From positions 558,001 through 622,000 of the forward strand of contig NW_025766936.1 in the NCBI RefSeq assembly GCF_003918875.1: 64,000 nucleotides of DNA, written 5' to 3'. The position numbers were made by a program, and so were the translations under genes. Position 1 is the stretch's first letter, and each line of letters starts with the position of its first letter. Positions 7,327 through 64,000 of this stretch are shown here, piece after piece. The notes below the pieces were generated by a model. That model did no database searches. It worked only from the letters and a program-made list of their open reading frames with translations, and had not been told where the DNA came from. The DNA is from Haliotis rubra (lineage: Eukaryota).

Positions 7327-8396
7327 TAAACTAGCGTCCAAAAGAAACACCACCAAATATGTTTTCTGGTCTAAAGCAAAACAAAAGCAAGTTATGGTAA
7401 CATTAAATGTTTTATTGCAAAAAGCAATCATTCGGCAACAATATTTAATGGATAACAAGAACAAAATCGGCGCAGCTCGTGATCTAATGTCACATGAATG
7501 ACATTGGGGTGCACTGTCCAGTATTCGATCACCAATGCAGAATCGACTGTTAGCTTTTACAACTTTCTGGGCAGCACATATTGTTCAATACCCGTCCCAA
7601 AGGTGCTCAACTGGGAACAGATCGGGCGACCTCGTCCGTGAAACTTGAAGAGCTGGAACCTGCTTTCGTCACTATAGAGCACTCTTCGCCAGTTTGGCTG
7701 CTGCCAGTGTAGCACAGTCCTGGTCCATCTCAATATGGCACGTCGGTGTTGGCACGTCAACGTCATGCCCTTAAAAGGTCGACAGGCACGGAGATTATGA
7801 TGGCGGAGTCGTCTGGCTACAGTGTGTTTGCTGACTGAATGTCCAAGGCTGTTGGCGCTTGATGACGTCTCAGTGACGTATCGGTTCCTCAGGTGAAACA
7901 CCTGTAAATACTGGACTTCTTGTTGGGTAGTGACCTTCGGTCTAACACTCCTTGGCCTGTCTGCAATAACTGCCAGTCTGTCGTAGACATGTGACAAGTC
8001 TGGCGATGGTGGATTTGCAGCATCCCATTGCCCTAGCCACATGACATTGTGCTGCTCCCATTTGTAGCTTACCGACTGCTCTCTCCCTCTGCTCTGCTGT
8101 TAAACGAGGCATGTTCCTGGTTGTCAATCAATTAACATGATGAAAGAGAATAAACCTGGTGAGCTTTTATACCCTAATATCATACGGGTAACTATTTGTG
8201 CACACTTTCCAATTTACGCGTGTAAATTCGGGTGGTTTTCTTTCATTAAATACGAAATGCACGCGCAAGTGTTCACAGGGAATAGACATGTTGTGTTCGA
8301 GAGATGTGTTTTTAGCTATTTTCGAACAGATTGACAATTATTTTGAAAATTTACAATCATTTTTATTTGGTGACGTTTCTTTTGGACGCAGGTTTA
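7327..8396 (-). mobile_element. Tc1/mariner-family DNA transposon remnant, internally deleted, with TIRs
   Basis: TIRs taaactagcgtccaaaagaaacaccaccaaat (7327) and atttggtgacgtttcttttggacgcaggttta (ends 8396) with terminal TA. Frameshifted transposase: paired-like HTH MPRLTAEQRERAVGKLQMG..., GRPK-like SVRPKVTT, and first catalytic Asp in WRRVLYSDESRF. The rest of the DDE domain is missing. Confidence 0.9.
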
Positions 8397-11444: not shown

Positions 11445-12686
11445 TCAGAAATATGATATCTTCAGGAAAAAACCCACTGTTGTAATGATGAACAGCATGA
11501 AAAACAAAAAGAAGAAAATCCTGCTCATCATTCTGCTGACTCGCTTCCAGGTCATTGGTGGTGGATTCCATGATTCATTCGACTTCTTGTCCAGTGACAG
11601 GATCTCCGTACCAACAGCAGGAGTGCCAAAGATGCATCTCTCCCAGGACCTTGTCATACGTCCCATCCACGACGGAACAGGTCTGATGGCTGAGTCCCGA
11701 TGGAACACTTGCACAATCCAGATGGTCAGGAACACGTAGAGAGAGCTCATGATAAACAGGCCAACAAGAAAGATAGTAAACATAGGTAACGAGTCACCAT
11801 TCTGTGGCAGCATTCCAGTGACGAAGGACAGGGATACAGTGAAAGACAGCAACACTGTGATGGCAAAGGACACCTTCTCGCCAGACTCCACAGGAATGAG
11901 GAACACCACCACATTCACTAATCCAAGCACCAAGACAGGCAGGAGAGTTGTCAGTATCGCCAAAGATGGCTTTCTCTTCAGGCTCATTTTGTAGTATACC
12001 CAAGGAAAATATTTGCCACTGTTTCCAAAGACAACTCTTGATGCAGATGTGTTAGTGATATCCCACTGGCTGTTGGAGTTATACAAACTTAATCCTATAG
12101 AGTTATTTGTCGATCTTAAATCAACTTCTTTCAGACCATTTCTCCAATCAAACGTCTCATAAGTACATTCCTGTTCATCCAAAGGAAAGTTGGTAACATC
12201 CATTTGGCAGAAAGTCTTGAAGGTATCGCCAGGTGACCAAGTCACAATTCCTTCGGCGGTCACTTTCATAACCCCAAAGTCGAGACCCAGAGGCTCAGCA
12301 TCAACCACCTGGTTCCAAACTGTGATGTAAGGTCTCCAAACCTTCCCATAGTCAGGATTTATTTCACTGATTCCTCCATATTCACTGGCGTTCCAGGTTA
12401 GAAACTCATCTTTCCAGGAAACTAAGAAAAACCCGTTAGCTGTCACTGTCTGAGTAACGTCATCAAAATTAGATATGCTGAGAAGGTAAAGTTCCAATGA
12501 GACCGTGATAGAGTCACTGCTGTTCTTGACTGGTCTGACATTTGGGTTGTTGTTTCTGATGATGTCATTGTGTAGGCGAAGTACATGGTGGTCGTCCTGA
12601 CCTCTAGTTGCCCCCAGAAACAACAGTAGACACAGTCCACAGGTCACTCCCTTAAGGTGTCGCACCCCTAGCCCCAAAAAATACAT
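11445..12686 (-). CDS. Divergent nAChR-like Cys-loop ligand-gated ion channel subunit, copy 1 (413 aa, no intron in CDS)
   Basis: Signal peptide, NVRPV, WKDEFLTWN, VWRP, Cys-loop CQMDVTNFPLDEQEC (C-x13-C), pre-M1 KRKP, M1, GEK-M2 (VSFAITVLLSFTV), M3, short loop, M4. No loop C CC. 4-codon deletion in the signal peptide relative to paralogs. Confidence 0.95.
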   Translation of the reverse strand: MYFLGLGVRHLKGVTCGLCLLLFLGATRGQDDHHVLRLHNDIIRNNNPNVRPVKNSSDSITVSLELYLLSISNFDDVTQTVTANGFFLVSWKDEFLTWNASEYGGISEINPDYGKVWRPYITVWNQVVDAEPLGLDFGVMKVTAEGIVTWSPGDTFKTFCQMDVTNFPLDEQECTYETFDWRNGLKEVDLRSTNNSIGLSLYNSNSQWDITNTSASRVVFGNSGKYFPWVYYKMSLKRKPSLAILTTLLPVLVLGLVNVVVFLIPVESGEKVSFAITVLLSFTVSLSFVTGMLPQNGDSLPMFTIFLVGLFIMSSLYVFLTIWIVQVFHRDSAIRPVPSWMGRMTRSWERCIFGTPAVGTEILSLDKKSNESWNPPPMTWKRVSRMMSRIFFFLFFMLFIITTVGFFLKISYF

Positions 12687-13614: not shown

Positions 13615-16560
13615 GTAGTCACGCCACACTGTCAACCAAGTCATCAAGTAAGACCACGCCACGCTGTCAACCAAGTCATCAAGTATCTCCACGAAACAGT
13701 TATCAAACATGACCACGTCAAATTATCAAAATATTAAGAGGTAAAACAACGCCGTATCGTCAGCGAAAATATAAAGCAAAAACACTATCAACCTAGTCAT
13801 TACGCATGACCATGCCACACTATCAGCAAAGCCATCAATCCTGACCACCACCACGTCATCAAGCATGACCACATGGCACTGTCAACTATGTCATACAGAA
13901 TGACCACACAACACTATAAACACTATAAAGTCATCAAACATAACCACATTATACTTTCAACCAAGTTAGCAAGCCTGGCCAAGCCACACTATCAACCATG
14001 TCACAGAGAATGACCATCAAACAAATCAGCAAGCATGACGATGCCACACTATGAACCAAGTCATCAAGCATGACCACACATCAACAACGCTATCAAACAT
14101 TATCAACCATATCATCTAGCATGGCCATGCTAAAGTATCGTAACACGTAACACGATCAATTAACTTATCAAGCATGACCACATCACACTATCAACGAGGT
14201 CATCAAGCATGACCACACTATGAACCAAGTTCTCTAGCGTGACCACACCACACTATCAAAGAGGTCATCAAGCATGACCACACTATCAACCAAGTTATCT
14301 AGCGTGACCACACTACACTATCAACGAGGTCATCAAGCATGACCACACTATCAACCAAGTTATCTAGCGTGACCACACCACACTATCAACGAGGTCATCA
14401 AGCATGACCACACTATCAACCAAGTTATCTAGCGTGACCACACCACACTATCAACGAGGTCATCAAGCATGACCACACTATCAACCAAGTTATCTAGCGT
14501 GACCACACCACACTATCAACGAGGTCATCAAGAATGACCATAATATCAACCACGTTATCTAACGTGACCACACAACACTATCAACGAGGTCATCAAGCAT
14601 GACCACACTATCAACCAAGTTATCTAACGTGACCACACCACACTATCAACGAGGTCATCAAGCATGACAACACTATCAACCAAGTTATCTAACGTGACCA
14701 CACCACACTATCAACGAGGTCATCAAGCATGACCACACTATCAACCAAGTTATCTAGCGTGACCACACCACACTATCAACGAGGTCATCAAGCATGACCA
14801 CACTATCAACCAAGTTATCTAGCGTGACCACACCACACTATCAACCAAGTTATCTAACGTGACCACACCACACTATCAACGAGGTCATCAAGCATGACCA
14901 CACTATCAACCAAGTTATCTAGCGTGACCACACCACACTATCAACGAGGTCATCAAGCATGACCACACTATCAACCAAGTTATCTAACGTGACCACACCA
15001 CACTATCAACGAGGTCATTAAGCATGACTACAATATCAACCAAGTAATCTAGCGTGACCACACTACACTATCAACGAGGTCATCAAGCATGACCACACTA
15101 TCAACCAAGTCATCTAGCGTGACCACACTACACTATCAACGAGGTCATCAAGCATGACCACACTATCAACCAAGTTATCTAGCGTGACCACACCACACTA
15201 TCAACGAGGTTATCAAGCATGACTGCACTATCAACCAAGTTATCTAGCGTGACCACACCACACTATCAACGAGGTCATCAAGCATGACCACACTATCAAC
15301 CAAGTTATCTAACGTGACCACACCACACTATCAACGAGGTCATCAAGCATGACTACAATATCAACCAAGTTATCTAGCGTGACCACACTACACTATCAAC
15401 GAGGTCATCAAGCATGACCACACTATCAACCAAAGCATTATCTATCTAGCGTGACCACACCACACTATCAACGAGGTCATCAAGCATGACCACACTATCA
15501 ACCAAGTTATCTGGCGTGACCACACCACACTATCAACGAGGTCATCAAGCATAACCACACTATCAACCAAGTTATCTAACGTGACCACACCACACTATCA
15601 ACGAGGTCATCAAGCATGACCACACTATCAACCAAGTTATCTAGCGTGACCACACAACACTATCAACGAGGTCATCAAGCATGACCACACTATCAACCAA
15701 GTTATCTAGCGTGACCACACCACACTATCAACGAGGTCATCAAGCATAACCACACTATCAACCAAGTTATCTAACGTGACCACACAACACTATCAACGAG
15801 GTCATCAAGAATGACCACACTATCAACCAAGTTATCTAACGTGACCACACCACACTATCAACGAGGTCATCAAGCATGACCACACTATCAACCAAGTTAT
15901 CTAGCGTGACCACACTACACTATTAACGAGGTCATCAAGCATGACCACACTATCAACCAAGTTATCTAACGTGACCACACCACACTATCAACGAGGTCAT
16001 CAAGCATGACCACACTATCAACCAAGTTATCTAGCGTGACCACACCACACTATCAACGAGGTCATCAAGCATGACCACACTATCAACCAAGTTATCTAGC
16101 GTGACCACACCACACTATCAACGAAGTCATCAAGCATGACCACACTATCAACCAAGTTATCTAGCGTGACCACACCACACTATCAACGAGGTCATCAAGC
16201 ATGACCACACTATCAACCAAGTTATCTAGCGTGACCACACCACACTATCAACGAGGTCATCAAGCATAACCACACTATCAACCAAGTTATCTAGCGTGAC
16301 CACACCACACTATCAACGAGGTCATCAAGCATGACCACACTATCAACCAAGTTATCTAGCGTGACCACACCACACTATCAACGAGGTCATCAAGCATGAC
16401 TACACCGCGCTATCAAGCATGACCATGAAACACTATCAATCAAGTTATCAAGCATGACCACGCCATATTGTCAACGAAGTCATCAAGCATGACCACGCCA
16501 TATTGTCAACGAAGTCATCAAGCATGACAACGCCACACGTCAACCAATCATTCAAGCAGG
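13615..16560. repeat. 35-bp satellite array upstream of copy 1; core (~14165-16400) is a 65-bp dimer (35+30 bp), ~34 copies
   Basis: Unit gaggtcatcaagcatgaccacactatcaac-caagttatctagcgtgaccacaccacactatcaac, with degenerate 35-mers at both edges. Confidence 0.95.
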
Positions 16561-17857
16561 ACCACCCGATCCTTGAAGTAAGTGCCAGTCAGTGAGGAGA
16601 TGTGAAACCAAAAGGTCGAGGTATGGGAACTAATCTCTGAAGCCGATGTTATGTCGCTCTCCATGAAGTGTAAAAAGACGTTTTAAAAATTCTCTCCATT
16701 GATCCAGAGATGACATTCAATATCGATAATAATATTCTTTCACCTCTGTGTGAGCATGTTTTGTTTTTGTTTTCACATCTGGTGGATAAATGAGGTGAGA
16801 ATCCTAACTTATCTTGACGTTGTTCAAAACAACCAGGACATCTTCAGACCTGAATCTGTCTTGGCAACGCTTCATATCGTTTGGTCAACCAAAATAGTTA
16901 AATGCCCATGAAAACATATCATATCACCAAACCTGACTAAGATGTTGCCAGTAAACTCGTATATCAGGCATTTCTAAGAATGGTTTCAGCTTTATCAAAA
17001 CCAACATCCATACACAATTGTAAGAAAGTCAGATTTTAGACTAAAATTCTTGGAAACAAAACCCGAATTCCACAACTAAGTGAAACCCAGTCAGTTGATG
17101 TCAATGACCTAATACTGAGACTGTTGTGGCGCGCCACTAGTACTTACAATATAAAATGCAAGCAATCACAATTAAAATTTAAACTAATTGCAAGATTTTA
17201 TGGATTATGACTTGCTTCATGATGATTGTAGCGATGTCAGATTCAGTGGAGATATGTATGCGCGGCGACAGTGACGACTCACGACGGCGGGCATCCGTGC
17301 ACTATGTCATCACACACAACAGGTGATCGTAGCCTACAAACAGGCCGCCATACATACACGTGCACATTTCAATAAAGAGGATTTATTGTGTAATGAATAC
17401 ATTAAACTGGTGTACGTTCTGACCATGGATACGTCTGTACAACTGTTTCTCTACCGAATCGAGACTCCCATACCACGACAGGCACAGGGATTCGTACATA
17501 GACGTGTTTTTTTCTGTTACTGAACCACTATCAACATATGATAACATTTGCCAAAAGGACACATATGACCATGTCATAATTGTAATGTGATCCTACTTCC
17601 GTAGTAAGAACTACGTCACCCACACTTAAAACTAACATCTATAAACAAACATAATAACATTTCTGGCTGAATACGTGGACAGACATACCACCGTCACAAT
17701 GAGAACTAGGCGACTGTATTTCACATCATAGGCAAACAATAGAACTGTCAATAAAGTCATTGAATGATGTTAACAATATCCACATACAATGTAAACATGG
17801 GATTCTCCAGCCTGTATAGAATGTGGGCATCACCGTATCGAATGCAAATAATTCCCT

Positions 17858-18150
17858 GTTAGTTGGTAGAGAATACTGACAACCAACCGTTAGTTAAATA
17901 TCAGATCATACTATTGTCTCTGTGTCCTTCCTTAGTTGGTAGAGAATACTGACAACCAACCGTTAGTTAAATATCAGATCATACTATTGTCTCTGTGTCC
18001 TTCCTTAGTTGGTAGAGAATACTGACAACCAACCGTTAGCTAAATATCAGATCATACTATTGTCTCTGTGTCCTTCCTTAGTTGGTAGAGAATACTGACA
18101 ACCAACCGTTAGAAAAATATCAGATCATACTATTGTCTCTGTGTCCTTCC
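17858..18150. repeat. 73-bp tandem repeat (4 copies) in the presumptive 3' UTR of copy 2
   Basis: agttggtagagaatactgacaaccaacc... at 17861, 17934, 18007, 18080. Single copy at ~11325 downstream of copy 1. Confidence 0.95.
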
Positions 18151-18195
18151 TATGTCAGACAGATTATATTTACAATAATCATGGTTTCCGTAATA

Positions 18196-19452
18196 TCAGA
18201 AATATGATATCTTCAGGAAAAACACCACTGTTGTAATGATGAACAGCATGAAAAACAAAAAGAAGAAAATCCTGCTCATCATTCTGCTGACTCGCTTCCA
18301 GGTCATTGGTGGTGGATTCCATGATTCATTCGACTTCTTGTCCAGTGACAGGATCTCCGTACTTCCAACAGCAGGAGTGCCAAAGATGCATCTCTCCCAG
18401 GACCTTGTCATACGTCCCATCCACGACGGAACAGGTTTGATGGCTGCGTCCCGATGGAACACTTGAACGGTCCAGATGGTCAGGAACACGTAGAGAGAGC
18501 TCATGATAAACAGGCCAACAAGAAAGATAGTAAACACAGGTATACTGTCAGCGTTCTGTGGCAGCAGTCCAGTGACGAAGGATAGGGATACAGTGAAAGA
18601 TAGCAACACCGTGATGGCAAAGGACACCTTCTCTCCAGACTCCACAGGAATGAGGAACACCACCACATTCACTAATCCCAGCACCAGGATAGGCAGGAGA
18701 GTTGTCAGTATCGCCAAAGATGGCTTTCTCTTCAGGCTCATTTTGTAGTGTACCCAAGGATAATAGCTGCCACTGTGTCCAAGGACAAGTCTTGATGCAG
18801 ATGTGTTGGTGATATCCCATTGGCTGTTGGAGTCAAACAAATTTAATCCTATAGAGTTATTAGTCGGTCTTAAATCAACTTCTTTCAGACTAGTTCTCCA
18901 ATCAAACGTCTTATAGGTACACTCCTGTTCATCCAAAGGAAAGTTGGTAACATCCATTTGGCAGAAAGTCTTGAAGGTATCGCCAGGTGACCAAGTCACA
19001 ATTCCTTCGGCGGTCACTTTAATGACACCAAAGTCGAGTCCCAGAGGTTCAGCGTCAACCACCTGGTTTCGAATTGCAATATAAGGTCTCCAAACCTTCC
19101 CATAGTCAGGATTTATTTCATTGATACCTCCATACTCGCTGACGTTCCAGGTTAGAAACTCATCTTTCCAGGAAACTAAGAAAAACCCATTGGCTGTCAC
19201 TGTCTGAGTAACTTCATCAAAATCAGATATGCTGAGAAGGTGAAGTTCCAATGAGACCGTGATAGAGTCACTGCTGTTCTTGACTGGTCTGACATTTGGG
19301 TTGTTGTTTCTGATGATGTCATTGTGTAGTCGAAGTACATGGTGGTCGTCCTGACCTCTAGATGTCCCCAGGAACAACAGTAGACACAGTCCACATGTCA
19401 CTCCCTTGAGGTGACCCACCCCTCGCTCTGTGAACAGCCCCAACACGTACAT
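18196..19452 (-). CDS. Divergent nAChR-like Cys-loop receptor subunit, copy 2 (418 aa)
   Basis: Full-length paralog of copy 1 with the same Cys-loop, GEK-M2 and 4 TM. Loop C RLVLGHSGSYYPW. One-codon insertion (GSTE) in the M3-M4 loop. Confidence 0.95.
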   Translation of the reverse strand: MYVLGLFTERGVGHLKGVTCGLCLLLFLGTSRGQDDHHVLRLHNDIIRNNNPNVRPVKNSSDSITVSLELHLLSISDFDEVTQTVTANGFFLVSWKDEFLTWNVSEYGGINEINPDYGKVWRPYIAIRNQVVDAEPLGLDFGVIKVTAEGIVTWSPGDTFKTFCQMDVTNFPLDEQECTYKTFDWRTSLKEVDLRPTNNSIGLNLFDSNSQWDITNTSASRLVLGHSGSYYPWVHYKMSLKRKPSLAILTTLLPILVLGLVNVVVFLIPVESGEKVSFAITVLLSFTVSLSFVTGLLPQNADSIPVFTIFLVGLFIMSSLYVFLTIWTVQVFHRDAAIKPVPSWMGRMTRSWERCIFGTPAVGSTEILSLDKKSNESWNPPPMTWKRVSRMMSRIFFFLFFMLFIITTVVFFLKISYF

Positions 19453-20810
19453 CCTCTGCCTTGTACTTCAACAGCAATGGGCGTATCCCGTTAGGCTATG
19501 AGGCAGTAGTGCGCATTTAACCAAACACCAACTCGGGGTGACGGCACAATTAACGGCAAAATCGTTTTTAGTGTACTGATCGTATTGCCAAATTGTGATT
19601 GATTATGGATTACAAAGAATAGCAAACAGAAACCTTTCAGTGATGCATTAATGCATTGACGCCTGCAGGCTATACAGTAATTGACACAGACAAAAACCGT
19701 TCACAAAATGTTGAAAATGTGACCGTTACTATAAAAACTCATTAATGAAAACAAAGAGTTTTAGATCAATAATCTGTCTCTTTCTCTCTAGTTCTAGTAC
19801 ATATCCCACACGCCGTTTACAATATTTATTAAGCATGCACAGTGCAATTCCACCCGGGATGTGAGCTCTCCTGCCTACATCTCTACACAATAATTTGTAT
19901 AATGTCACCTTTTAGAGTGAGAGTTGTCTGACATGACAATAAAATATAGGCAGCAAAACACTTCCATGATCATAAAACATCGCTATTAAAAGAAACATTT
20001 GTTCTATGCCGTCCCACGAATGATTCGATGCCGATTCCTAAGAAAGGTTTTTCAAACTGTTCCCTTCTTCTCAAGCACCCTTACTTCACTGCTTCCGTTC
20101 TCTTATGGGTCAGTTGGTCTTACTTTCTCGCGTTCTCGTCTTTTGTTATGTCTCAGTCACCATGGGGTCGCATGTAGACCTACGATGTAAATGATGAAAT
20201 GTTCTTACCATTCGCTCAAATATATTACTATCAAAAACCAACTTTATTTCTTTTCTAAATGTACTCTTATTAGCTTTAAATTGAATTTCAAAATACAGAG
20301 CTGCTATCATAGTGTTTTCGTTGTTGATAAGTTTTGTGCCACTATTAATGGCAATATAAAATGCATGCAATCACGATTAAGATTTAAACTAACAAGTTTT
20401 ATGGATTATGACTTATTTTATTATGATTGTAGCGATGTCAGATTCAGTGGGGATATGTATGTGGAGCGACAGTGACGACTCACGACGGCGTGCATCTGTG
20501 CACGATGTCATCACGCACAACAAGTGAACGTAGCCTACAAAACAGGCCGTCATACATACACGTGCTCGTCTCAATAAAGAGGATTTATTGTGTAATGAAT
20601 ACATTAAACTGATGTACGTCCTGACCATGGATACGTCTGTACAACTGTTTCTCTACCGGATCGAGACTCCAATACTACTATTGTACTCCCATAATCGTAT
20701 TGTTTTTCTATTACAAAACGACTATCAGCACATTGTAAGGTTGTCACAGGGACACATATAACCATGCCATACTTGTAATGAGGGGGGTGGGTACTACTTC
20801 AGAAGTAAAA

Positions 20811-21357: not shown

Positions 21358-22310
21358 TCAGAGATTTGATATCTTCAGAAATCCACACACTGTTGCAATG
21401 ATGAACAGCATGAAAACCAAAAAGAAAAATATCCTGCTCATCATTCTGCTGACTCGCTTCCAGGTCATTGGTGGTGGATTGCACGATTCATTCGACTTCT
21501 TGTCCAGTGACAGGATCTCCGTACCAACAGCAGGAGTGCCAAAGATGCATCTCTCCCAGGACCTTGTCAAACGTCCCATCCACGACAGAACAGATCTGAT
21601 GGTTTCGTCCCGATGGAACACTTGCACGATCCAGATGGTCAGGAACACGTAGAGAGAGCTCATGATAAACAGGCCAACAAGAAAGATAGTAAACACAGGT
21701 ATACTGTCACCGTTCTGTGGCAGCAGTCCAGTGACGAAGGATAGGGATACAGTGAAAGACAGCAACACCGTGATGGCAAAGGACACCTTCTCACCAGAAT
21801 CCACAGGAATGAGGAACACCACCACATTCACTAACCCCAGCATCAGGACAGGCAGGAGAGTTGTCAGTATCGCTAAAGATGGCTTTCTCTTCAGGCTCAG
21901 CTCGTAGTATACAAAAGGAATATATATGCCACTGGTTTCAAAGACAACCCTTGACGCAGATGTTTTGATGATATCCCATTGGCTGTTGGCGTTGAACAAA
22001 TTTAATCCTATAGAGTTATTAGTCGGCCTTAAATCAACTTCTTTCAGACCATTTCTCCAGTCAAACGTCTTATATATACACTCCTGTTCATCAAGAAAGG
22101 AAAGTTGGTAACATCCATTTGGCAGAAAATCTTGAAGGTATCGCCAGGTGCCCATGTTACAATTCCTTCGGCGGTCACTTTAATGACCCCAAAGTCGAGA
22201 CCCAGAGGCTCAGCATCAACCACCTGGTTCCGGATTGTGATGTAAGGTCTCCAAACATTCCCATAGTCAGGATGTATTTCACTGATTCCTCCATATTCAC
22301 TGGCGTTCCA
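21358..22310 (-). pseudogene. nAChR-like copy 3, pseudogene (5' third deleted, frameshift in the Cys-loop)
   Basis: Homology to paralogs stops at the codons for WNASEY (22310); signal peptide and N-terminus are absent. A +2 insertion at ~22093 (catcaagaaagg vs catccaaagg) shifts the frame, so the ORF-track N-terminus MGTWRYLQ... is out of frame. Confidence 0.92.
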
Positions 22311-22463
22311 ACTTTTTTAATTTTAGGACATAAATTCTGCAAACAAATTACAGAGTTGGTCTGACGTCTTGATTATGATCAGTGTTTCATTGAGTATTTT
22401 ATGTTTATTAGTTTTCGAGTTAGATTCCAATTCATCAGTCCGCTTTTTAGCCAAACGGACTAT
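22309..22463. mobile_element. Right arm only of the TA-MITE seen complete at 31574-31956
   Basis: ttttaggacataaattctgcaaacaaattacagagttgg...agccaaacggactata matches 31811-31956 and is fused directly to the truncated copy 3. Confidence 0.85.
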
Positions 22464-22779: not shown

Positions 22780-24115
22780 AGGAATGACCACGCCACACGG
22801 TAAACCAAGTCATCAATCATGACCATGCCGAAAGATATACCAAGTCATCAATCATGACCACGCAACGCTATCAACCAAGTCATCAATCATGACCACGCAA
22901 CGCTATCAACCAAGTCATCAAGCCTGACCATGCCACACTATCAACCAAGTCATCAACCCTGATCACGCCAAGTCATCCAAGTCATCAAGCCTGACCATGC
23001 CACACTATCAACCAAGTCATCAAGCCTGACCATGCCACACTATCAACCAAGTCATCAAGACTGACCATGCCACACTATCAACCAAGTCATCAAGCCTGAC
23101 CATGCCACACAATCGATCAAGTCATATAGCCTGACCATGCCACACAATCGATCAAGCCATCAAGCCTGACCATGCCACACTATCGACCAAGTCATATAGC
23201 ATGACCATGCCACACTATCAGTCAAGTCATCAAGCCTGACCATGCCACACTATCGACCAAGTCATATAGCATGACCACGCCACACTATCAACCAAGTCAT
23301 CAAGCCTGACCATGCCACACTATCAACCAAGTCATCAAGCCTGACCATGCCACACTATCGACCAAGTCATATAGCATGACCATGCCACACTATCGACCAA
23401 GTCATATAGCATGACCATGCCACACTATCAACCAAGTCATCAAGCCTGACCATGCCACACTATCAACCAAGTCATATAGCATGACCATGCCACACTATCA
23501 ACCAAGTCATATAGCATGACCATGCCACACTATCAACCAAGTCATATAGCATGACCATGCCACACTATCAACCAAGTCATATAGCATGACAATGCCACAC
23601 TATCGACCAAGTCATCAAGCCTGACCATGCCACACTATCAACCAAGTCATATAGCATGACCTTGCCACACTATCAACCAAGTCATATAGCATTACAATGC
23701 CACACTATCAACTAAGTCATCAAGCCTGACCATGCCACGCTATCGACCAAGTCATATAGCATGACAATGCCACACTATCGATCAAGTCATCAAGCCTGAC
23801 CATGCCACGCCATCAACCAACTCATATAGCATGACAATGCCACACTATCGACCAAGTCATCAAGCCTGACCATGCCACGCTATCAACCAAGTCATATAGC
23901 ATGACCATGCCACACTATCGACCAAGTCATATAGCATGACAATGCCACACTATCGACAAGTCATCAAGCCTGACCACGCCACACTATTTACCAAGTCATA
24001 TAGCATGACCATGCCACACTATCAACCAAGTCATCAAGCCTGACCACACCACACTATCGACCAAGTCATCAAGCCTGACCATGCCACACTATCGACCAAT
24101 CATTCAAGCAGGACC
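22780..24115. repeat. 35-bp satellite array upstream of copy 3 (~38 copies)
   Basis: Unit caagtcat(caagcc/atagca)tgaccatgccacactatc(a/g)ac. Confidence 0.95.
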
Positions 24116-24363
24116 ACCAGATCCCTGCAGTAAGTGCCAGTCAGTGAGGACATGTGCAACCAAAAGGTCAGTGTACGGGAACGTATCGTCTTGTCATCTT
24201 GACATGCTGACAGTGATGTGTATTCGGCTTATTTTTCTGTCTACAATAAAATCAATGGAATGACTAAACCTGACCTTTGTTGTTGAAACAGTGATTGAAA
24301 ATCTTTGATGAAAGCAAATTATTTTTGTCCAATGAAATTTGAACAATATGGACGTGCTCTTAG

Positions 24364-26063
24364 AATAGAATAGAATAATACTTTAATGCCTTTTCAGGAA
24401 TTCGTATTACATCAGCAGAGCTACTGACACATTAGAGAGATACCAAACATATTTACATAAATTCTTTGATTTAGGTATCTTCACTTTTGTTTAAGAGAGA
24501 TATGGTACTTGCAATAAAGGATGTACGGGCTCTCATAGTTTTCACAATTGGAACTTTGTAGCGGCGGCCTGAAGGGAGGAGGTTGTATTCCGAATTTAAG
24601 TAGTGAGTACGGTCAGATATGATTTTGACATCTTGATTCACGATTTTCCGCTCATATATTGATGATAAACATTCAAATCTGACTCCAGCCATTTTACTTG
24701 CAGTGTTTTGTCTATTTTAGATTTGAGATGAACTGAGAGAGACCCGTACCAACAATGGAAGGAAAATGTTAAAATACTCTGAATAAATCCTACATAAAAA
24801 GATGACATCACAGATGGGTTAACATAAAAAGATCTCACTTTACGCATGAGATGAAGACGTTGTTGACACCTTTTGTGTAGGGATTCAGTGTTAGAGTTCC
24901 AGTTCAGCTTAGAGTCAATGAAGGTTCCCAGATACTTATACTCCGACACTGTCTCAAAACATTCACTGTTGATTATCACTGGAAGCATTTCTGTGGGTTT
25001 ACTCCGAAAGTCAATTATCAGTTCCCTTTTTTGGTGACATTTAAGATTAAGTGGTTTTCTGCACACCAAGTCGTAAAATGATTAATGTCCTCTTTTTCCA
25101 GTTTTTCAGAATCAGTGTCGTTCAGTTTGCCGACAATTGCTGCATCATCTGCGAACTTTACAGTTGAACAGATTGAATTCGAGCTTGCACAATCATTAGT
25201 GTAGAGGGTGAAAAGAACAGGAGATATTACACAGCCTTGTGGTGCACCAGTGTTGGTGGTCCGTTTACTCGATACAGCCCCGTTAACTGTCACGTACTGC
25301 TGTCTGTCCACAAGAAAGTTTTCGATCCACTTGATGAGGTATGAGTTAACGCCCATGTCTAACAGTTTCTGTATCATGATATGTGGCTGGATAGTGTTGA
25401 ACGCAGATGAAAAGTCAACGAAGAGGATCCGGATGTATGACTTAGGTGTTTCTAGATGTTTATAGACATTATTAAGGAGTGACAGTGTGGCATCAACAAC
25501 TCCTCTCCTTGACCTGTAGGCGAACTGAAGCGGGTCCAGTATGTCGGCAACTTCCTGACGGAGATGTCTCAACAAGATGCGTTCCAGCGACTTCATTGCT
25601 ATAGATGTGAGAGCAACTGGCCTGTAGTCGTTGAGTTCTTTAGATTGTGTCTTTTTAGGAACTGGTACAATTTCTGATGTTTTCCAGACCGAAGGAATAA
25701 CGTGTGTAGTCACTGAGAATTGATACAATCTAGTGAAAACTGTACACAGTTGAAGTCTGCACTCCTTCAACACAATGCCGTCAAGGTTGTCAGGTCCTTT
25801 TGCTTTTCTGATGTTAATTCTGGAGAAGCTTTGAATGACGTCAGCTTCTGATATATGGATACGACTTTCACTATCCTGTACGGCTTCACTAACTTGAGCT
25901 CTCTCATTGGTAAAGTCGTGACAATCAAAGCGGCTGTAGAAAGTGTTAAGGTCCTCAGCAAAGGTTTTATTATCCCCGGCGTTGGTTGTCTGTCGTCGCC
26001 TGCTCTTGCCAATCATCGTGTTCACGCCTTGCCAGGCTTGTTGCAGATTGCTTTGCTGAAACT
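24364..26063 (-). mobile_element. 5'-truncated Rex1/Babar-like (CR1-group) LINE with reverse transcriptase
   Basis: ORFs 25018-26025, 24638-25069 and 24471-24692 join by frameshifts: KAKGPD, DYRPVALTS, LFVDFSSAFNTI, GAPQGCVISPVLF, KFADD, YKYLG, C-terminal QQRLHLMRK...SILTFSFHCWYG, LPSGRRY. (ctatt)n 3' tail. Empty site gacgtgctcttagtacccaac at 37160. Confidence 0.92.
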
Positions 26064-29291: not shown

Positions 29292-30545
29292 TTAGAAATG
29301 TGACATCTTCAGAAACACACACACTGTTGCTATGATGAACAGCATGAAAAACAAAAAGAAAAATATCCTGCTCATCATTCTGCTGACTCGCTTCCAGGTC
29401 ACTGGTGGTGGATTGCATGATTCATTCGACTTCTTGTCCAGTGACAGGATCTCCGTACCAACAGCAGGAGTGCCAAGGATGCATCTCTCCCAGGACCTTG
29501 TCATACGTCCAATCCACGACGGAACAGGTTTGATGGCTGCGTCCCGATGGAACACTTGCACGATCCAGATGGTCAGGAACACGTAGAGAGAGCTCATAAT
29601 AAACATGCCAACAAGAAAGATAGTAAACATAGGTAACGAGTCACCATTCTGTGGCAGCAGTCCAGTGACGAAGGACAGGGATACAGTGAAAGACAGCAAC
29701 ACCGTGATGGCAAAGGACAGCTTCTCGCCAGACTCCACAGGAATGAGGAACACCACCACATTCACTAATCCCAGCACCAGGACAGGCAGGAGGGTTGTCA
29801 GAATCGCCAAAGATGGCTTTCTCTTCAGGCTCATTTTGTAGTATACAAAAGGAATATATCTGCCACTGGTTTCAAAGACAACCCTTGACGCAGATGTGTT
29901 GATGATATCCCACTGACCGTTAGAATTAAATAAATCTAATCCTATTGAGTTATTAGTCGGTCTTAAATCAACTTCTTTCAGACCATTTCTCCAGTCAAAC
30001 GTCTTATATATACACTCCTGTTCATCCAAAGGAAAGTTGGTAACATCCATTTGGCAGAAAGTCTTGAAGGTATCGCCAGGTGCCCATGTTACAATTCCTT
30101 CGGCGGTAACTTTAATGACCCCAAAGTCGAGTCCCAGGGGCTCAACGTCAACCACCTGGTTCCGGATTGTGATGTAAGGTCTCCAAACCTTCCCATAGTC
30201 AGGATTTATTTCACTGATTCCTCCATACTCACTGGCGTTCCAGGTTAGAAACTCATCTTTCCAGGAAACTAAGAAAAACCCGTTAGCTGTCACTGTTTGA
30301 GTAACTTCATCAAAATCAGACATGCTGAGAAGGTAAAATTCTAAAGAGACCGTGATAGAGTCACTGCTGTTCTTGACTGGTCTGACATTTTGGTTGTTGT
30401 TTGTGATGATGTCATTGTGTAGTCGAAGTACATGGTGGTCGTCCTGACCTCTAGATGCCCCCAGGAACAACAGCAGACACAGTCCACATGTCACTACCTT
30501 GAGATGACGCAGCCCTAGCTCTGTGAACAGCCCCAACACGTACAT
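29292..30545 (-). CDS. Divergent nAChR-like Cys-loop receptor subunit, copy 4 (417 aa)
   Basis: Full-length paralog. Loop C RVVFETSGRYIPF; GEKL. Confidence 0.95.
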   Translation of the reverse strand: MYVLGLFTELGLRHLKVVTCGLCLLLFLGASRGQDDHHVLRLHNDIITNNNQNVRPVKNSSDSITVSLEFYLLSMSDFDEVTQTVTANGFFLVSWKDEFLTWNASEYGGISEINPDYGKVWRPYITIRNQVVDVEPLGLDFGVIKVTAEGIVTWAPGDTFKTFCQMDVTNFPLDEQECIYKTFDWRNGLKEVDLRPTNNSIGLDLFNSNGQWDIINTSASRVVFETSGRYIPFVYYKMSLKRKPSLAILTTLLPVLVLGLVNVVVFLIPVESGEKLSFAITVLLSFTVSLSFVTGLLPQNGDSLPMFTIFLVGMFIMSSLYVFLTIWIVQVFHRDAAIKPVPSWIGRMTRSWERCILGTPAVGTEILSLDKKSNESCNPPPVTWKRVSRMMSRIFFFLFFMLFIIATVCVFLKMSHF

Positions 30546-31956: not shown

Positions 31957-32289
31957 ATAATATTTTATAAAGATTTCCATTCCTATTGACCAAGGGTTAT
32001 TGACGCTCTCGGAAATATACAATCATAATAATCATTATCAATGTCATTCCTAAATCGGACAAGCGCGTATTCTTAACTAGCCCAAGATGAAGAAACATAC
32101 TCCAACAAATTCATGTCAGACTTGTCATTACAGGGAAACATCTCCCCAACTTTCAAGGTATTGAATAATGGAAAGGGCTTATAGTCTATATTCTGGATTA
32201 ACTTGTATTTGACGTTGCTTTCGTTGCGCAGCTACAATCGGAGAACGGAAAAAAGAATAACCGGATAACATGACAAATTAAAAAGCAAG

Positions 32290-44703: not shown

Positions 44704-45957
44704 TTAGAAACATGATATCTTCAGGAAAACACACACTGTTGCTATGATGAACAGCATGAAAAACAAAAAGAAAAAAATCCTGCTCATCATTCTGCTGACT
44801 CGCTTCCAGGTCATTGGTGGTGGATTCCATGATTCATTCGACTTCTTGTCCAGTGACAGGATCTCCGTACCAACAGCAGGAGTGCCAAAGATGCATCTCT
44901 CCCAGGACCTTGCCATACGTCCCATCCACGACGGAACAGGTCTGATGGCTGCGTCTCGATGGAACACTTGCACGATCCAGATGGTCAGGAACACGTACAG
45001 AGAGCTCATGCTAAACAGGCCAACAAGAAAGATAGTAAACACAGGTATACTGTCAGCGTTCTGTGGCAGCAGTCCAGTGACGAAGGATAGGGAAACAGTG
45101 AAAGACAGCAACACTGTGATGGCAAAGGACAGCTTCTCGCCAGACTCCACAGGAATGAGGAACACCACCACATTCACTAATCCCAGCACCAGGACAGGCA
45201 GGAGGGTTGTCAGTATCACTAAAGATGGCTTTCTCTTCAGGCTCATTTTGTAGTATACCCAAGGAAAATATATGCCACTGTTTCCAAGGACAAGTCTTGA
45301 AGCACATGTGTTTGTGATATCCCATTGGCTGTTGGCGTTGAACAAATCTATTCCTATAGAGTTATTGATCGGTCTTAAATCAACTTCTTTCAGATCACTT
45401 CCCCAAGCAAACGTCTCATAAGTACATTCCTGTTCATCCAAAGGAAAGTTGGTAACATCCATTTGGCAGAAAGTCTTGAAGGTATCGCCAGGTGACCAAG
45501 TCACAATTCCTTGGGCGGTCACTTTCATAACCCCAAAGTCGAGACCCAGAGGCTCAGCATCAACCACCTGATTCCAAATTGTGATGTAAGGTCTCCAAAC
45601 CTTCCCATAGTCAGGACCTATTTCACTGATATCCCCATACTCGCTGGCGTTCCAGGTTAGAAATTCATCTTTCCAGGAAACTAAGAAAAACCCGTTAGCT
45701 GTCACTGTCTGAGTAACTTCATCAAAATTGGACATGCTGAGAAGGTGAAATTCTAAAGAGACCGTGATTGTGTCACTGCTGTTCTTGACTGGTCTGACAT
45801 TTGGGTTGTTGTTTCTGATGAAGTCATTGTGTAGTCGAAGGACATGGTGGTCATCCTGACCTCTAGATGTCCCCAGGAACAACAGTAGACACAGCCCACA
45901 TGTCACTACCTTGAAGTGATGCATCCCTCGCTCTATGAACAGCCCCAACAAATACAT
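44704..45957 (-). CDS. Divergent nAChR-like Cys-loop receptor subunit, copy 5 (417 aa)
   Basis: Full-length paralog. Loop B YETFAWGSD; loop C CASRLVLGNSGIYFPW; GEKL. Confidence 0.95.
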   Translation of the reverse strand: MYLLGLFIERGMHHFKVVTCGLCLLLFLGTSRGQDDHHVLRLHNDFIRNNNPNVRPVKNSSDTITVSLEFHLLSMSNFDEVTQTVTANGFFLVSWKDEFLTWNASEYGDISEIGPDYGKVWRPYITIWNQVVDAEPLGLDFGVMKVTAQGIVTWSPGDTFKTFCQMDVTNFPLDEQECTYETFAWGSDLKEVDLRPINNSIGIDLFNANSQWDITNTCASRLVLGNSGIYFPWVYYKMSLKRKPSLVILTTLLPVLVLGLVNVVVFLIPVESGEKLSFAITVLLSFTVSLSFVTGLLPQNADSIPVFTIFLVGLFSMSSLYVFLTIWIVQVFHRDAAIRPVPSWMGRMARSWERCIFGTPAVGTEILSLDKKSNESWNPPPMTWKRVSRMMSRIFFFLFFMLFIIATVCVFLKISCF

Positions 45958-50300: not shown

Positions 50301-50595
50301 AAGACCACACCGCGCTGTCAACTGAGTCATCAAGCAAGACCACACCACACTGTCAACCGAGTCATCAACCAAGACCACACCGCACTGTCAACTGAGTCAT
50401 CAAGCGTGTCCACACCTCGCTATCAACTTTGTCATCAAGCAAGACCACACCGCACTGTCAACTAAGTCATCAAGCGTTACCACACCTCGCTATCAACTAA
50501 GTCATCAAGCAGAACCACACCACGCTGTCAACTATGTCATCAAGCAGGACCACACCTCGCTGTCAACTATGTATAAGTCATTTAGCAGGACCACC
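47345..50595. repeat. 35-bp satellite array upstream of copy 5 (~90 copies)
   Basis: Variant unit ct(a/g)agtcatcaagca(a/g)gaccacaccgc(a/g)ctgtcaa, with the same terminal sequence as the other arrays. Confidence 0.95.
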
Positions 50596-52979: not shown

Positions 52980-54233
52980 TCAGAAATAAGATATCTTCAG
53001 AAAACCACACACTGTCGCTATGATGAACAGCATGAAAAACAAAAAGAAGAAAATCCTGCTCATCATTGTGCTGACTCGCTTCCAGGTCATTGGTGGTGGA
53101 TTCCATGATTCATTCGACTTCTTGTCCAGTGACAGGATCACCGTACCAACAGCAGGAGTGCCAAAGATGCATCTCTCCCAGGACCTTGTCATACGTCCCA
53201 TCCACGATGGAACAGGTCTGATGGCTTCGTCTCGATGGAACACTTGCACAATCCAGATGGTCAGGAACACGTAGAGAGAGCTCATAATAAACAGGCCAAC
53301 AAGAAAGATAGTAAACATAGGTAACGAGTCACCATTCTGTGGCAGCAGTCCAGTGACGAAGGATAGGGATACAGTGAAAGATAGCAACACTGTGATGGCA
53401 AAGGACACCTTCTCGCCAGACTCCACAGGAATGAGGAACACCACCACATTCACTAATCCCAGCACCAGGACAGGCAGGAGAGTTGTCAGAATCGCCAAAG
53501 ATGGCTTTCTCTTCAGGCTCATTTTGTAGTATACAAACGGAATACATCTGCCACTGTTTTCAAGGACAATTCTTGAAGCAGATGTGTTAGTGATATCCCA
53601 CTGGCCGTTAGAGTTAAATAAATCTAATCCTATAGAGTTATTAATCGGTCTTAAATCAACTTCTTTCAGACCATTTTTCCAATCAGACGTCATATATATA
53701 CACTCTTGTTCATCCAAAGGAAAGTTGGTAACATCCATTTGGCAGAAAGTCTTGAAGGTATCGCCAGGTGCCCAAGTCACAGTTCCTTGGGCGGTAACTT
53801 TAATGACACCAAAGTCGAGTCCTAAAGGTTTAACATTAACCACTTGGTTGCGAATTGTGATGTAAGGTCTCCAAACCTTCCCATAGTCAGGATTTATTTC
53901 ACTGACTCCTCCATACTCGCTGGCGTTCCAGGTTAGAAATTCATCTTTCCAGGAAACTAAGAAAAACCCGTTAGCTGTCACTGTTTGAGTAACTTCATCA
54001 AAGTCGGACATGCTGAGAAGGTGAAGTTCTAAAGAGATCGTGATAGTGTCACTGCTGTTCTTGACTGGTCTGACATTTGGGTTGTTGTTTCTGATGAGGT
54101 CATTGTGTAGTCGAAGTACATGGTGGTCGTCCTGACCTCTACTTGCCCCCAGGAACAACAGTAGACACAGTCCACATGTCACTACCTTGAGTTTACGCAC
54201 CCCTCGCTCTATGAACAGCCCCAACACATACAT
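52980..54233 (-). CDS. Divergent nAChR-like Cys-loop receptor subunit, copy 6 (417 aa)
   Basis: Full-length paralog. Loop B YMTSDWKNG; loop C RIVLENSGRCIPF. Confidence 0.95.
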   Translation of the reverse strand: MYVLGLFIERGVRKLKVVTCGLCLLLFLGASRGQDDHHVLRLHNDLIRNNNPNVRPVKNSSDTITISLELHLLSMSDFDEVTQTVTANGFFLVSWKDEFLTWNASEYGGVSEINPDYGKVWRPYITIRNQVVNVKPLGLDFGVIKVTAQGTVTWAPGDTFKTFCQMDVTNFPLDEQECIYMTSDWKNGLKEVDLRPINNSIGLDLFNSNGQWDITNTSASRIVLENSGRCIPFVYYKMSLKRKPSLAILTTLLPVLVLGLVNVVVFLIPVESGEKVSFAITVLLSFTVSLSFVTGLLPQNGDSLPMFTIFLVGLFIMSSLYVFLTIWIVQVFHRDEAIRPVPSWMGRMTRSWERCIFGTPAVGTVILSLDKKSNESWNPPPMTWKRVSTMMSRIFFFLFFMLFIIATVCGFLKISYF

Positions 54234-63878: not shown

Positions 63879-64000
63879 ATGTATGTGCTGAGGCTGTTCA
63901 CAGAGCGAGGGGTGCGCCACCTCAATGTAGTGACATGTGGACTGTGTCTACTGTTGTTTCTGAAGGCGAGCAGAGGTCAGGACGATCACCATGTACTTCG
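63879..64000 (+). CDS. nAChR-like copy 7, N-terminus (inverted orientation, runs off the window)
   Basis: ATG at 63879 translates MYVLRLFTERGVRHLNVVTCGLCLLLFLKASRGQDDHHVL(R), matching the paralog signal peptides. Same leader tgttgaagtacaag.cagag.ATG. Intactness cannot be seen. Confidence 0.85.
   Translation, partial: MYVLRLFTERGVRHLNVVTCGLCLLLFLKASRGQDDHHVL

What the first reader, a model, noticed from the sequence alone, without database searches (positions are those of the whole stretch)
18740..19095. Two pocket chemotypes: Trp/Glu versus Arg/Lys at positions equivalent to nAChR Tyr93 and Lys145
By manual alignment to nAChR alpha motifs (WxPDIxLYN; CxxKFGSW; YxCCxxxYPD), the loop A Tyr is W in copies 1 and 5 but R in copies 2, 3, 4 and 6. 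This co-varies with E (1, 5) vs K (2, 3, 4) or M (6) at the Lys145-equivalent and with GVMK vs GVIK in loop E. TrpB is kept, loop D Trp is F, TyrC1 is F/L, TyrC2 is F/Y/I, the conserved loop A Asp is Y, and the Asp after loop C is W/F. Inference: an Arg in the aromatic box should disfavour quaternary ammonium and may suit anionic or carboxylate ligands, while W/E copies may bind cationic or hydrophobic ligands. Heteropentamers could give combinatorial coding.
Basis: inference. Interest (0 to 1): 0.7.

Follow-up and report, generated by a model that had tools for sequence, protein, structure and literature searches.

The report
Abalone orphan nicotinic-like channel pocket variants
A row of abalone genes for nicotinic-receptor-like ion channels really does differ at the predicted ligand pocket (Trp/Glu versus Arg/Lys), but this is one inherited sequence block within a wider, many-state pocket series of a known kind of mollusc gene expansion, and what the channels bind is still unknown.

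Summary
The window (Haliotis rubra) carries six minus-strand, single-exon nAChR-like genes, five intact and one broken. The residue aligned to alpha7 Tyr93 is Trp in copies 1 and 5 and Arg in copies 2, 3, 4 and 6. The Lys145-equivalent is Glu (1, 5), Lys (2, 3, 4) or Met (6).

- Arg, not Trp, is the default in the core abalone clade (17 of 20 aligned proteins plus one further flanking copy). Trp is one derived lineage, one transition away from the CGG Arg codon.
- The 145-equivalent takes seven states in that clade (K, E, M, I, S, D, N), so there are at least five pocket classes, not two.
- The loop E Ile/Met is predicted to face the core, and it does not co-vary outside the window.
- The window's co-variation is one shared ~160-nt block in copies 1 and 5, which includes three synonymous sites. 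It sits in a strongly recombinant array.
- Trp/Glu recurs in a H. asinina copy, and a single origin is not rejected.

Four of the five aromatic-box residues are lost and the vicinal Cys pair is absent, while the GEK pore motif and gating elements are kept. These are probably cation-selective orphan channels that are not gated by acetylcholine. The ligand-charge claims are untested. An earlier follow-up on this same window reached a concordant mosaic-divergence conclusion.

The parts
11445..12686 (-). Copy 1: intact single-exon nAChR-like pLGIC gene, 413 aa. Pocket class Trp/Glu: W124 at 12315-12317, M140 at 12267-12269, E177 at 12156-12158.
   Evidence: ORF; Pfam LBD E 7e-40 plus TM domain; codon coordinates
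18196..19452 (-). Copy 2: intact gene, 418 aa. Pocket class Arg/Lys: R128 at 19069-19071, I144 at 19021-19023, K181 at 18910-18912, TrpB W185 at 18898-18900.
   Evidence: AF2 model pLDDT 84.5
18740..19095 (-). The finding's own range: codons 120-238 of copy 2, covering loops A, E, B, F and C of the extracellular domain.
   Evidence: coordinate arithmetic; loop spans
21358..22313 (-). Copy 3: pseudogene. It is 5'-truncated (starts at about codon 101) and has a frameshift near 22095-22100. Arg (22230-22232) and Lys (22069-22071) are retained.
29292..30545 (-). Copy 4: intact gene, 417 aa. Class Arg/Lys: R128 CGG at 30162-30164, K181 at 30003-30005.
44704..45957 (-). Copy 5: intact gene, 417 aa. 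Class Trp/Glu: W128 at 45574-45576, M144 at 45526-45528, E181 at 45415-45417.
52980..54233 (-). Copy 6: intact gene, 417 aa. Class Arg/Met: R128 CGC at 53850-53852, M181 at 53691-53693.
63879..64000 (+). Start of a seventh family member on the opposite strand, running off the window. Its first 40 residues equal the N-terminus of P0010 (class Arg/Asp).
   Evidence: tblastn; translation; alignment

Best explanation
The window holds part of an array restricted to abalone. At least nine genes lie in or next to the window. They are single-exon, tandemly duplicated genes for nicotinic-receptor-like pentameric ligand-gated channel subunits. They keep the Cys-loop, the four TM helices, the GEK (-1' Glu) cation-selectivity motif, the 9' Leu gate and the coupling elements. 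They have lost the vicinal Cys pair and four of the five aromatic-box residues; only TrpB remains. They are therefore most likely functional, cation-selective orphan channels that acetylcholine does not gate. Their amino-acid differences are concentrated in principal-face loops B and C. The Trp/Glu versus Arg/Lys contrast is one branch of a multi-state pocket series: Arg/Lys, Arg/Met, Arg/Ile (with Glu at the K143-equivalent), Arg/Ser, Arg/Asp and Trp/Glu. Arg at the loop A position is the ancestral state of the clade. Trp arose in one lineage that probably predates the H. rubra / H. asinina split. It is one C-to-T transition from the CGG Arg codon at a CpG (inferred route). In this window Trp travels with Glu, and with a core-facing Met, because copies 1 and 5 share one ~160-nt block in a heavily gene-converted array. 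Positions 93 and 145 are spatial neighbours in nAChRs, so the Trp-Glu pairing may reflect local packing or electrostatics as much as ligand choice. What is shown: the gene structure, the residue equivalences, the state distribution, the block linkage, the recombination and the purifying selection on the scaffold. What is inferred: that the channels are non-cholinergic, that they are cation-selective, and that pocket diversity tunes unknown ligands.
For: Pfam LBD and TM domains at E~1e-40 and 1e-15 in all intact copies. Alpha7 is the best solved relative at E 2e-50, with unambiguous alignment around loops A and B. The AF2 model has pLDDT 84.5 and matches Torpedo alpha at Z 35.1, rmsd 1.8 A. Homologues at 69% identity or more occur only in Haliotis species; the next relatives are at 47% or less. 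In the alignment of 20 core-clade proteins, 17 have Arg and 3 have Trp at the Y93-equivalent; the one flanking copy not in that alignment (cm1) also has Arg. None of 37 more distant relatives has Arg or Trp there, and 21 of them have Tyr. The 145-equivalent takes seven states, and codons 179 and 181 have the highest non-synonymous diversity in the mature protein. pN/pS is 1.34 in loop B and 1.47 in loop C, against 0.19 in TM1-3 and 0.26 in the ECD framework. For the c1+c5 block, 6 of 7 supporting sites lie within nt 382-541, including synonymous codons 138, 143 and 177, with p=0.0007. Hudson-Kaplan Rmin is 29, and 1230 of 2211 site pairs fail the four-gamete test. H. asinina P0005 is Trp/Glu and sits next to Arg/Met P0004 in a syntenic array. 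A single Trp/Glu clade is not rejected, p-AU 0.29. Across the two species, 111 sites share the same two states among paralogues and only 5 are fixed differences. Literature context: intronless tandem nAChR expansions in molluscs (PMC6896357); divergent clades with binding-residue substitutions (PMC13174522); the K145 triad and the Y93-K145 contact (PMC2266616, PMC11655062).
Against: No expression or functional data are available, so function is inferred only from intact ORFs and purifying selection. pN/pS in loops B and C has bootstrap intervals that include 1 (0.68-3.8 and 0.82-3.3), so relaxed constraint on the pocket cannot be separated from diversifying selection. The MK-like contrast of shared versus private variation is not significant (p=0.26). 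H. asinina P0005 shares no synonymous state exclusively with c1 and c5 near the two sites, so convergent origin of Trp/Glu in the two species is not excluded. The model is a monomer, and I could not read its coordinates, so side-chain orientation is inferred from hairpin register and homology rather than measured.
Confidence: 0.7

Rival explanations
1. One reading: there are two functional pocket chemotypes. Arg/Lys copies bind anionic or carboxylate ligands, Trp/Glu copies bind cationic or hydrophobic ligands, and mixing them in heteropentamers gives combinatorial coding.
For: The sites are genuine orthosteric or peri-orthosteric equivalents. Arg/Lys copies also carry Lys at the pocket-facing L109-equivalent, giving formal pocket charge of about +2, against -1 to 0 in the Trp/Glu copies (residue table). 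Trp/Glu is kept in a second species. Heteromeric tuning has a precedent in cephalopod chemotactile receptors (cited in PMC10338036 and PMC13174522).
Against: There are at least five classes, not two, and Arg pairs with K, M, I, S and D. In anion-binding pLGICs such as GABA-A and GluCl, the carboxylate-binding Arg residues sit on the complementary face rather than loop A (textbook knowledge, not tested here). The co-variation is one linked block and at most one evolutionary event. No ligand data exist.
Confidence: 0.12
2. Neutral drift: the orthosteric pocket is no longer used. These subunits would be accessory or structural, or gated elsewhere. W/R and E/K/M would then be single-nucleotide changes under relaxed constraint, carried along by gene conversion.
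For: pN/pS in loops B and C is about 1.3-1.5 with intervals that include 1. R to W is a single CpG transition, and E/K/M/I are one-step neighbours. Synonymous variation is shared across species as abundantly as non-synonymous variation (50 versus 61 sites). The K145-equivalent is variable even among relatives that keep a full aromatic box.
Against: TrpB is invariant in all 23 Haliotis sequences. Loop A (pN/pS 0.25), loop D (0.10) and loop F (0.29) remain constrained. Class-defining residue sets recur in both species: W128+E181, and E179+I181+A155.
Confidence: 0.2
3. Arg as a built-in cation: the guanidinium at the loop A position stacks on TrpB and occupies the box. Arg-class principal faces would then be self-liganded (primed or closed to agonist), and only Trp-class faces would bind a diffusible ligand.
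For: Apo Alpo4 shows a self-liganded TrpB (PMC10338036). Tethered quaternary ammonium at alpha93 activates nAChRs (my recollection of the tethered-agonist literature; not checked here). TrpB is the only box residue kept.
Against: This is purely structural speculation; no coordinates were examined. Arg is the state in about 85% of the clade, which would leave most subunits without a usable principal face.
Confidence: 0.05

Closest known systems
Expanded intronless, tandemly arrayed nAChR-like genes of molluscs (Jiao et al. 2019, PMC6896357; clades with altered binding residues in the MolluscaGenes preprint, PMC13174522)
   Same: Single-exon coding regions, tandem arrays with pseudogene members, lineage-specific expansion, a GEK-type cation motif, and divergence at canonical ligand-binding residues.
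   Different: Neither paper mentions Haliotis (no occurrences). This abalone-restricted clade, its Arg at the loop A Tyr position and its multi-state 145-equivalent are not mentioned in the passages I searched.
Vertebrate alpha7 / muscle alpha1 nAChR subunits
   Same: Best sequence relative (E 2e-50, about 27-29% identity) and best structural match (Z 31-35). The Cys-loop with its FPxD motif, TrpB, the pre-M1 Arg, the -1' Glu and the 9' Leu are all conserved.
   Different: There is no vicinal Cys pair. Y93, Y190, Y198, W55 and D89 are replaced, and the K145-D200 salt-bridge partners are lost. The intracellular loop is short (about 50 aa). The NCBI name 'alpha-7-like' overstates the relationship.
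Cephalopod chemotactile receptors (CRs)
   Same: nAChR-derived, intronless, tandemly expanded, with loss of ACh-coordinating residues and variation concentrated in the pocket.
   Different: Not the same clade: no cephalopod protein appears among the 58 hits, and the nearest non-Haliotis relatives are at 36% identity or less. The CR pocket is described as exceptionally hydrophobic (PMC13174522), whereas this one is lined with Arg and Lys. Expression in sensory tissue is unknown here.
Alpo4, orphan nAChR-like receptor of Alvinella pompejana (PMC10338036; PDB 8bx5 family)
   Same: A lophotrochozoan orphan without the loop C CC tip. It is found as a solved relative (E 1.4e-37) and did not respond to ACh or serotonin.
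   Different: Alpo4 keeps the aromatic residues of loops A, B, C and D (F103, W159, Y199, Y205, W65). The abalone proteins keep only TrpB.

Membership tests
Cys-loop / pentameric ligand-gated ion channel superfamily | Neur_chan_LBD plus Neur_chan_memb domains | tested here: met
   Pfam E 5e-38 to 5e-41 (LBD) and about 1e-14 (TM) in all five intact copies
Cys-loop / pentameric ligand-gated ion channel superfamily | Two Cys residues separated by 13 residues (the Cys-loop), and four TM helices | tested here: met
   C164-x13-C178 is read directly from the sequence. The AF2 model has helices at 244-267, 274-296, 306-332 and 385-417.
nAChR alpha-type (agonist-binding) subunit | Vicinal Cys pair at the tip of loop C (YxCC) | tested here: not met
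   No CC in loop C of any copy. The loop is 2-3 residues shorter than in relatives that contain CC.
nAChR alpha-type (agonist-binding) subunit | Aromatic box: TyrA (Y93), TrpB (W149), TyrC1, TyrC2, and TrpD on the partner face | tested here: not met
   Only TrpB is kept. TyrA is R/W, TyrC1 is H/N/T (or F/L by register), TyrC2 is Y/F/I, and TrpD is F.
Cation-selective nAChR/5-HT3 branch | -1' Glu (GEK motif) without the Pro-Ala-Arg anion signature, and a 9' Leu gate | tested here: met
   The motif PVESGEK...TVLLSFTV is read in all copies and aligned to the alpha7 M2. Selectivity itself was not measured.
Cephalopod chemotactile receptor (CR) clade | Phylogenetic placement within the CR or CR-like clade | tested here: inconclusive
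   No cephalopod protein is among the 58 homologues found. No CR sequence was available for a joint tree.
Cephalopod chemotactile receptor (CR) clade | Hydrophobic ligand pocket, and expression in a contact-chemosensory epithelium | not testable with these tools
   The pocket positions here are rich in Arg and Lys, which argues against a CR-like hydrophobic pocket. No expression data were available.

The most novel reading that the evidence does not exclude
The abalone array is a chemosensory-type receptor panel. In this reading, discrete pocket classes (Trp/Glu, Arg/Lys, Arg/Met, Arg/Ile+Glu, Arg/Asp) have been held by selection across species against continual gene conversion. The Arg/Lys-lined pockets would detect anionic or zwitterionic waterborne cues. 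Conceivably these include the GABA-like and amino-acid settlement cues long known to act on abalone larvae, whose receptor has, to my knowledge, not been identified. This would be an independent parallel to cephalopod chemotactile receptors.
Probability: 0.06. Interest if true: 0.75.

Novelty: new member of a known kind. Interest (0 to 1): 0.35.

Why it matters
Mollusc genomes hold hundreds of nicotinic-like channel genes with no known ligand. So far only the cephalopod chemotactile receptors have been shown to be repurposed as chemosensors. This abalone clade is compact and experimentally tractable. The scaffold and pore are nearly invariant, and a handful of one-nucleotide pocket changes (R/W at the TyrA site; K/E/M/I/D at the neighbouring 145 site) define classes that recur in two species. 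That makes it a convenient natural mutant series for asking how an aromatic cation-binding box is converted to other chemistries. As it stands, though, it is a descriptive refinement of a known kind of gene expansion, not a demonstrated new function.

Tried and rejected
1. The first AF2 run used a shallow 25-sequence alignment. It gave pLDDT 61, with loops A and E below 50, and was discarded. It was rerun with 57 sequences.

2. I asked whether Trp/Glu arose independently in the two species. The protein tree leaves the nine-member subclade unresolved, and a single clade is not rejected (p-AU 0.29), so convergence could be neither shown nor excluded.

3. An MK-style contrast of trans-species shared versus private variation was not significant (p=0.26). 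The shared-versus-fixed contrast (p=0.02) rests on only 5 fixed sites and I do not rely on it.

4. I looked for positive selection with pairwise NG86 counts. Loops B and C exceed 1, but the intervals include 1. Tree-based site models were not attempted, because pervasive recombination (Rmin 29) would invalidate them.

5. The pseudogene or decay explanation for the whole array was rejected. Seven intact ORFs lie in or beside the window, whole-gene dN/dS is 0.27-0.40, and pN/pS is 0.19 in TM1-3.

6. I looked for octopus CRT1 among structural neighbours. It is not in the top 50 rows of either Foldseek or VIA-align, so no direct comparison was made.

7. The large representative-protein search was not used, because the family assignment was never in doubt.

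8. Literature searches found no paper on this abalone clade.

Full report
**What is there.** The window is from the blacklip abalone, Haliotis rubra. The closest database proteins are named H. rubra and sit on one 1,284,789-bp contig. A fetched locus of contig QXJH01000284.1 overlaps the left end of the window exactly.

ORF listing and tblastn show six copies of one gene on the minus strand.
- Five are intact single-exon ORFs of 413-418 aa: c1 11445-12686, c2 18196-19452, c4 29292-30545, c5 44704-45957, c6 52980-54233.
- c3 (21358-22313) is a pseudogene. It lacks the first ~100 codons and has a frameshift near 22095-22100.
- A seventh member begins on the plus strand at 63879 and runs off the window. 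Its 40 residues equal the N-terminus of P0010.
- Two further minus-strand copies, c0 (=P0006) and cm1, lie just left of the window.

All intact copies hit Pfam Neur_chan_LBD (E about 1e-40) and Neur_chan_memb.

**Checking the residue equivalences.** phmmer against all PDB sequences puts human alpha7 first, at E 2e-50. There is no gap between the N-terminal helix and loop A, and only one 1-residue insertion before loop B, so the mapping is secure:
- c2 F90 = W55
- L92 = Q57
- Y124 = D89
- R128 = Y93
- K145 = L109
- T153 = Q117
- S155 = L119
- K181 = K145
- W185 = W149
- Y231 = Y195
- W233 = D197

The codons were read directly.
- Loop A: TGG (Trp) in c1 and c5; CGA, CGG, CGG and CGC (Arg) in c2, c3, c4 and c6.
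- K145-equivalent: GAG (Glu) in c1 and c5; AAG (Lys) in c2, c3 and c4; ATG (Met) in c6.
- Loop E: GVMK in c1 and c5; GVIK in the rest.

The one exception is TyrC1. Both HMMER and a MAFFT alignment that includes relatives with the YxCC motif place it on H/N/T (c2 H226), not on the F/L two residues upstream. Loop C is 2-3 residues shorter here, so that position stays ambiguous.

An AlphaFold2 model built on a 57-sequence alignment has mean pLDDT 84.5 and pTM 0.71. It superposes on Torpedo alpha at Z 35.1, rmsd 1.8 A over 363 residues, with other muscle, alpha4beta2 and alpha7 subunits close behind. A first model from a shallow alignment was poor and was discarded.

**Are these pocket positions?** Y93 is an aromatic-box residue. 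[quoted passage not shown] 2005, PMC2266616). In recent simulations it makes an apparent contact with Y93 (PMC11655062).

The loop E Ile/Met is different. In the model, residues 144-147 and 151-154 form a hairpin around the invariant Gly150. By register, K145, T153 and S/A155 correspond to the pocket-facing L109, Q117 and L119. Residue 144 alternates to the other side. This is inferred from secondary structure and homology, because I could not read the model's coordinates.

**Wider family.** Proteins at 69% identity or more occur only in Haliotis (H. rubra, H. asinina, H. rufescens, H. cracherodii). The next relatives, also Haliotis, are at 44-47%, and everything else is at 36% or less.
- In the alignment of the 20-member core clade, the TyrA position is Arg in 17 and Trp in 3: c1, c5 and H. 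asinina P0005. The flanking copy cm1, which is not in that alignment, is also Arg.
- The sister Haliotis group has Gln at that position.
- None of 37 more distant relatives has Arg or Trp there; 21 have Tyr.
- The 145-equivalent is K, E, M, I, S or D in the core clade and N in the sister group.
- The pocket-facing loop E position is K, T, R or Q, and loop C is hypervariable.
- Met at residue 144 occurs with Arg in nine sequences, and Ile occurs with Trp in P0005, so the GVMK/GVIK co-variation fails outside the window.
- Trp always occurs with Glu (3 of 3), and Glu never occurs with Arg.

The picture is therefore Arg as the default, with at least five classes defined by the neighbouring residue, plus one Trp/Glu lineage. 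It is not two chemotypes.

**Why the sites co-vary in the window.**
- Among the five intact copies, every one of the ten possible 2-versus-3 splits is supported by some informative sites. Of 2211 site pairs, 1230 fail the four-gamete test, and the Hudson-Kaplan Rmin is 29. The array is a gene-conversion and recombination mosaic.
- The c1+c5 split is carried by 7 sites, of which 6 lie within nt 382-541 (codons 128-181). These include synonymous changes at codons 138, 143 and 177. Permutation over the informative sites gives p=0.0007.
- W128, M144 and E181 are thus physically linked in one ~160-nt block that c1 and c5 share by descent or by conversion.
- The H. asinina array on CM074530.1 (P0007, P0008, P0005, P0004, within about 50 kb) has a Trp/Glu gene next to an Arg/Met gene, plus two Arg/Ile genes with Glu at the K143-equivalent. 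These match the H. rubra classes c1/c5, c6 and c0/cm1.
- Synonymous divergence is 0.13-0.22 within H. rubra, 0.30-0.38 between species, and 0.27-0.42 within H. asinina.
- Across the two species, 111 sites carry the same two states among paralogues (61 non-synonymous, 50 synonymous), and only 5 sites are fixed differences.
- This pattern fits old paralogue lineages that have been partly homogenised within H. rubra.
- The protein tree leaves the nine-member subclade unresolved, and a single Trp/Glu clade is not rejected (p-AU 0.29).
- The co-variation therefore counts as at most one evolutionary event. Arg(CGG)-to-Trp(TGG) is a single CpG transition, and E, K, M and I are one-step neighbours.

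**Selection.** For the five window copies, whole-gene dN/dS is 0.27-0.40. For eleven coding sequences, pooled pN/pS by region is:

| Region | pN/pS | Bootstrap interval |
|---|---|---|
| TM1-3 | 0.19 | 0.12-0.28 |
| ECD framework | 0.26 | 0.17-0.38 |
| Loop A | 0.25 | 0.09-0.43 |
| Loop D | 0.10 | 0.00-0.38 |
| Loop F | 0.29 | 0.14-0.52 |
| Loop E | 0.40 | 0.15-0.89 |
| Loop B | 1.34 | 0.68-3.8 |
| Loop C | 1.47 | 0.82-3.3 |

- Codons 179 and 181 have the highest non-synonymous diversity in the mature protein.
- The scaffold is under purifying selection, so these are not decaying retrocopies.
- Loops B and C evolve at or above the neutral rate. Diversifying selection is possible but not shown.
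- An earlier follow-up on another finding in this same window (s1-329492) reached the same verdict. I reproduced it independently.

**Mechanism.**
- The pore keeps the GEK motif with the -1' Glu, the 9' Leu and the 13' Val.
- The Cys-loop keeps its FPxD motif, and the pre-M1 Arg and the M2-M3 Pro are present.
- By the established determinants of this family, these features predict a gateable, cation-selective channel.
- The vicinal Cys pair, D89, Y93, Y190, Y198, W55 and D200 are all replaced, so acetylcholine is an unlikely agonist.
- The NCBI label 'alpha-7-like' should not be read functionally.
- In Arg/Lys copies, the pocket carries R128 and K181 on the principal face and K145 on the complementary face, partly offset by D184. 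In Trp/Glu copies the formal charge is about -1 to 0.
An anionic ligand remains pure inference.
- Alternatives: the 128/181 pair tunes local packing or gating rather than ligand choice; the pocket is unused; or Arg occupies the box itself.

**Comparison and novelty.**
- Intronless, tandemly arrayed, sequence-diverse nAChR-like genes are a documented feature of molluscs (Jiao et al. 2019, PMC6896357).
- A 2026 preprint reports divergent molluscan clades with substitutions at canonical binding residues and suggests a gastropod chemosensory role (PMC13174522).
- Orphan lophotrochozoan receptors such as Alpo4 lack the CC tip but keep the aromatic residues (PMC10338036).
- Cephalopod chemotactile receptors are the functional precedent, but they form a different clade and are described as having a hydrophobic pocket.
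- I found no paper on this abalone clade.
- My verdict is a new member of a known kind. The specifics are tidy but modest: Arg as the ancestral TyrA replacement, a multi-state neighbour position, and classes shared between two species.

Noticed in passing
window 13957-16565, 22785-24116, 32286-36923, 47379-50569: A 35-bp minisatellite (up to 132 units) lies 1.3-1.7 kb upstream of the start codons of copies c1, c4 and c5, and about 0.5 kb upstream of where the truncated copy c3 begins. It is strongly strand-asymmetric and accounts for the GC-skew troughs. It looks like part of the duplication unit and could mediate unequal exchange.
   Followed up: partly
window 63879-64000 (+) and 58014-62254: A seventh receptor gene (equal to P0010, pocket class Arg/Asp) starts head-to-head with copy 6 at the right edge of the window. 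A 4.2-kb satellite with a 120/235-bp unit separates the two.
   Followed up: partly
L004:10001-11254 and L004:16894-18147 (same H. rubra contig, just left of the window): Two more intact minus-strand copies, both Arg/Ile with Glu at the K143-equivalent. They match H. asinina P0007 and P0008, so the array and its pocket classes extend beyond the window.
   Followed up: yes
window 25018-26025 (-) and 7557-8042 (-): Transposable-element debris lies between the receptor genes: a reverse-transcriptase ORF fragment (RVT_1, E 2e-32) and a Tc3-type transposase HTH fragment (E 3e-9).
   Followed up: partly
window 17859-18151; also 39967-41525: A 73-bp x4 tandem repeat sits immediately 3' of copy 2's stop codon. 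A 61-bp x25 array lies between copies 4 and 5, and a translated stretch resembling its unit (NEYIKL.YVLTMDTSVQLFLYRIETP) recurs in short ORFs at 17323-17523 and 20588-20761, flanking copy 2 and 3' of copy 3.
   Followed up: no
L001:10064, L002:13876, L003:13867 (H. asinina): Three of the four H. asinina orthologues have ATA or CTA where the H. rubra copies have the initiator ATG. The NCBI models add an upstream exon for P0007 and P0008 (gene spans of about 5.1 kb) and start P0005 at an in-frame ATG 63 nt upstream, so the 5' gene structure differs between species or the models are uncertain.
   Followed up: no
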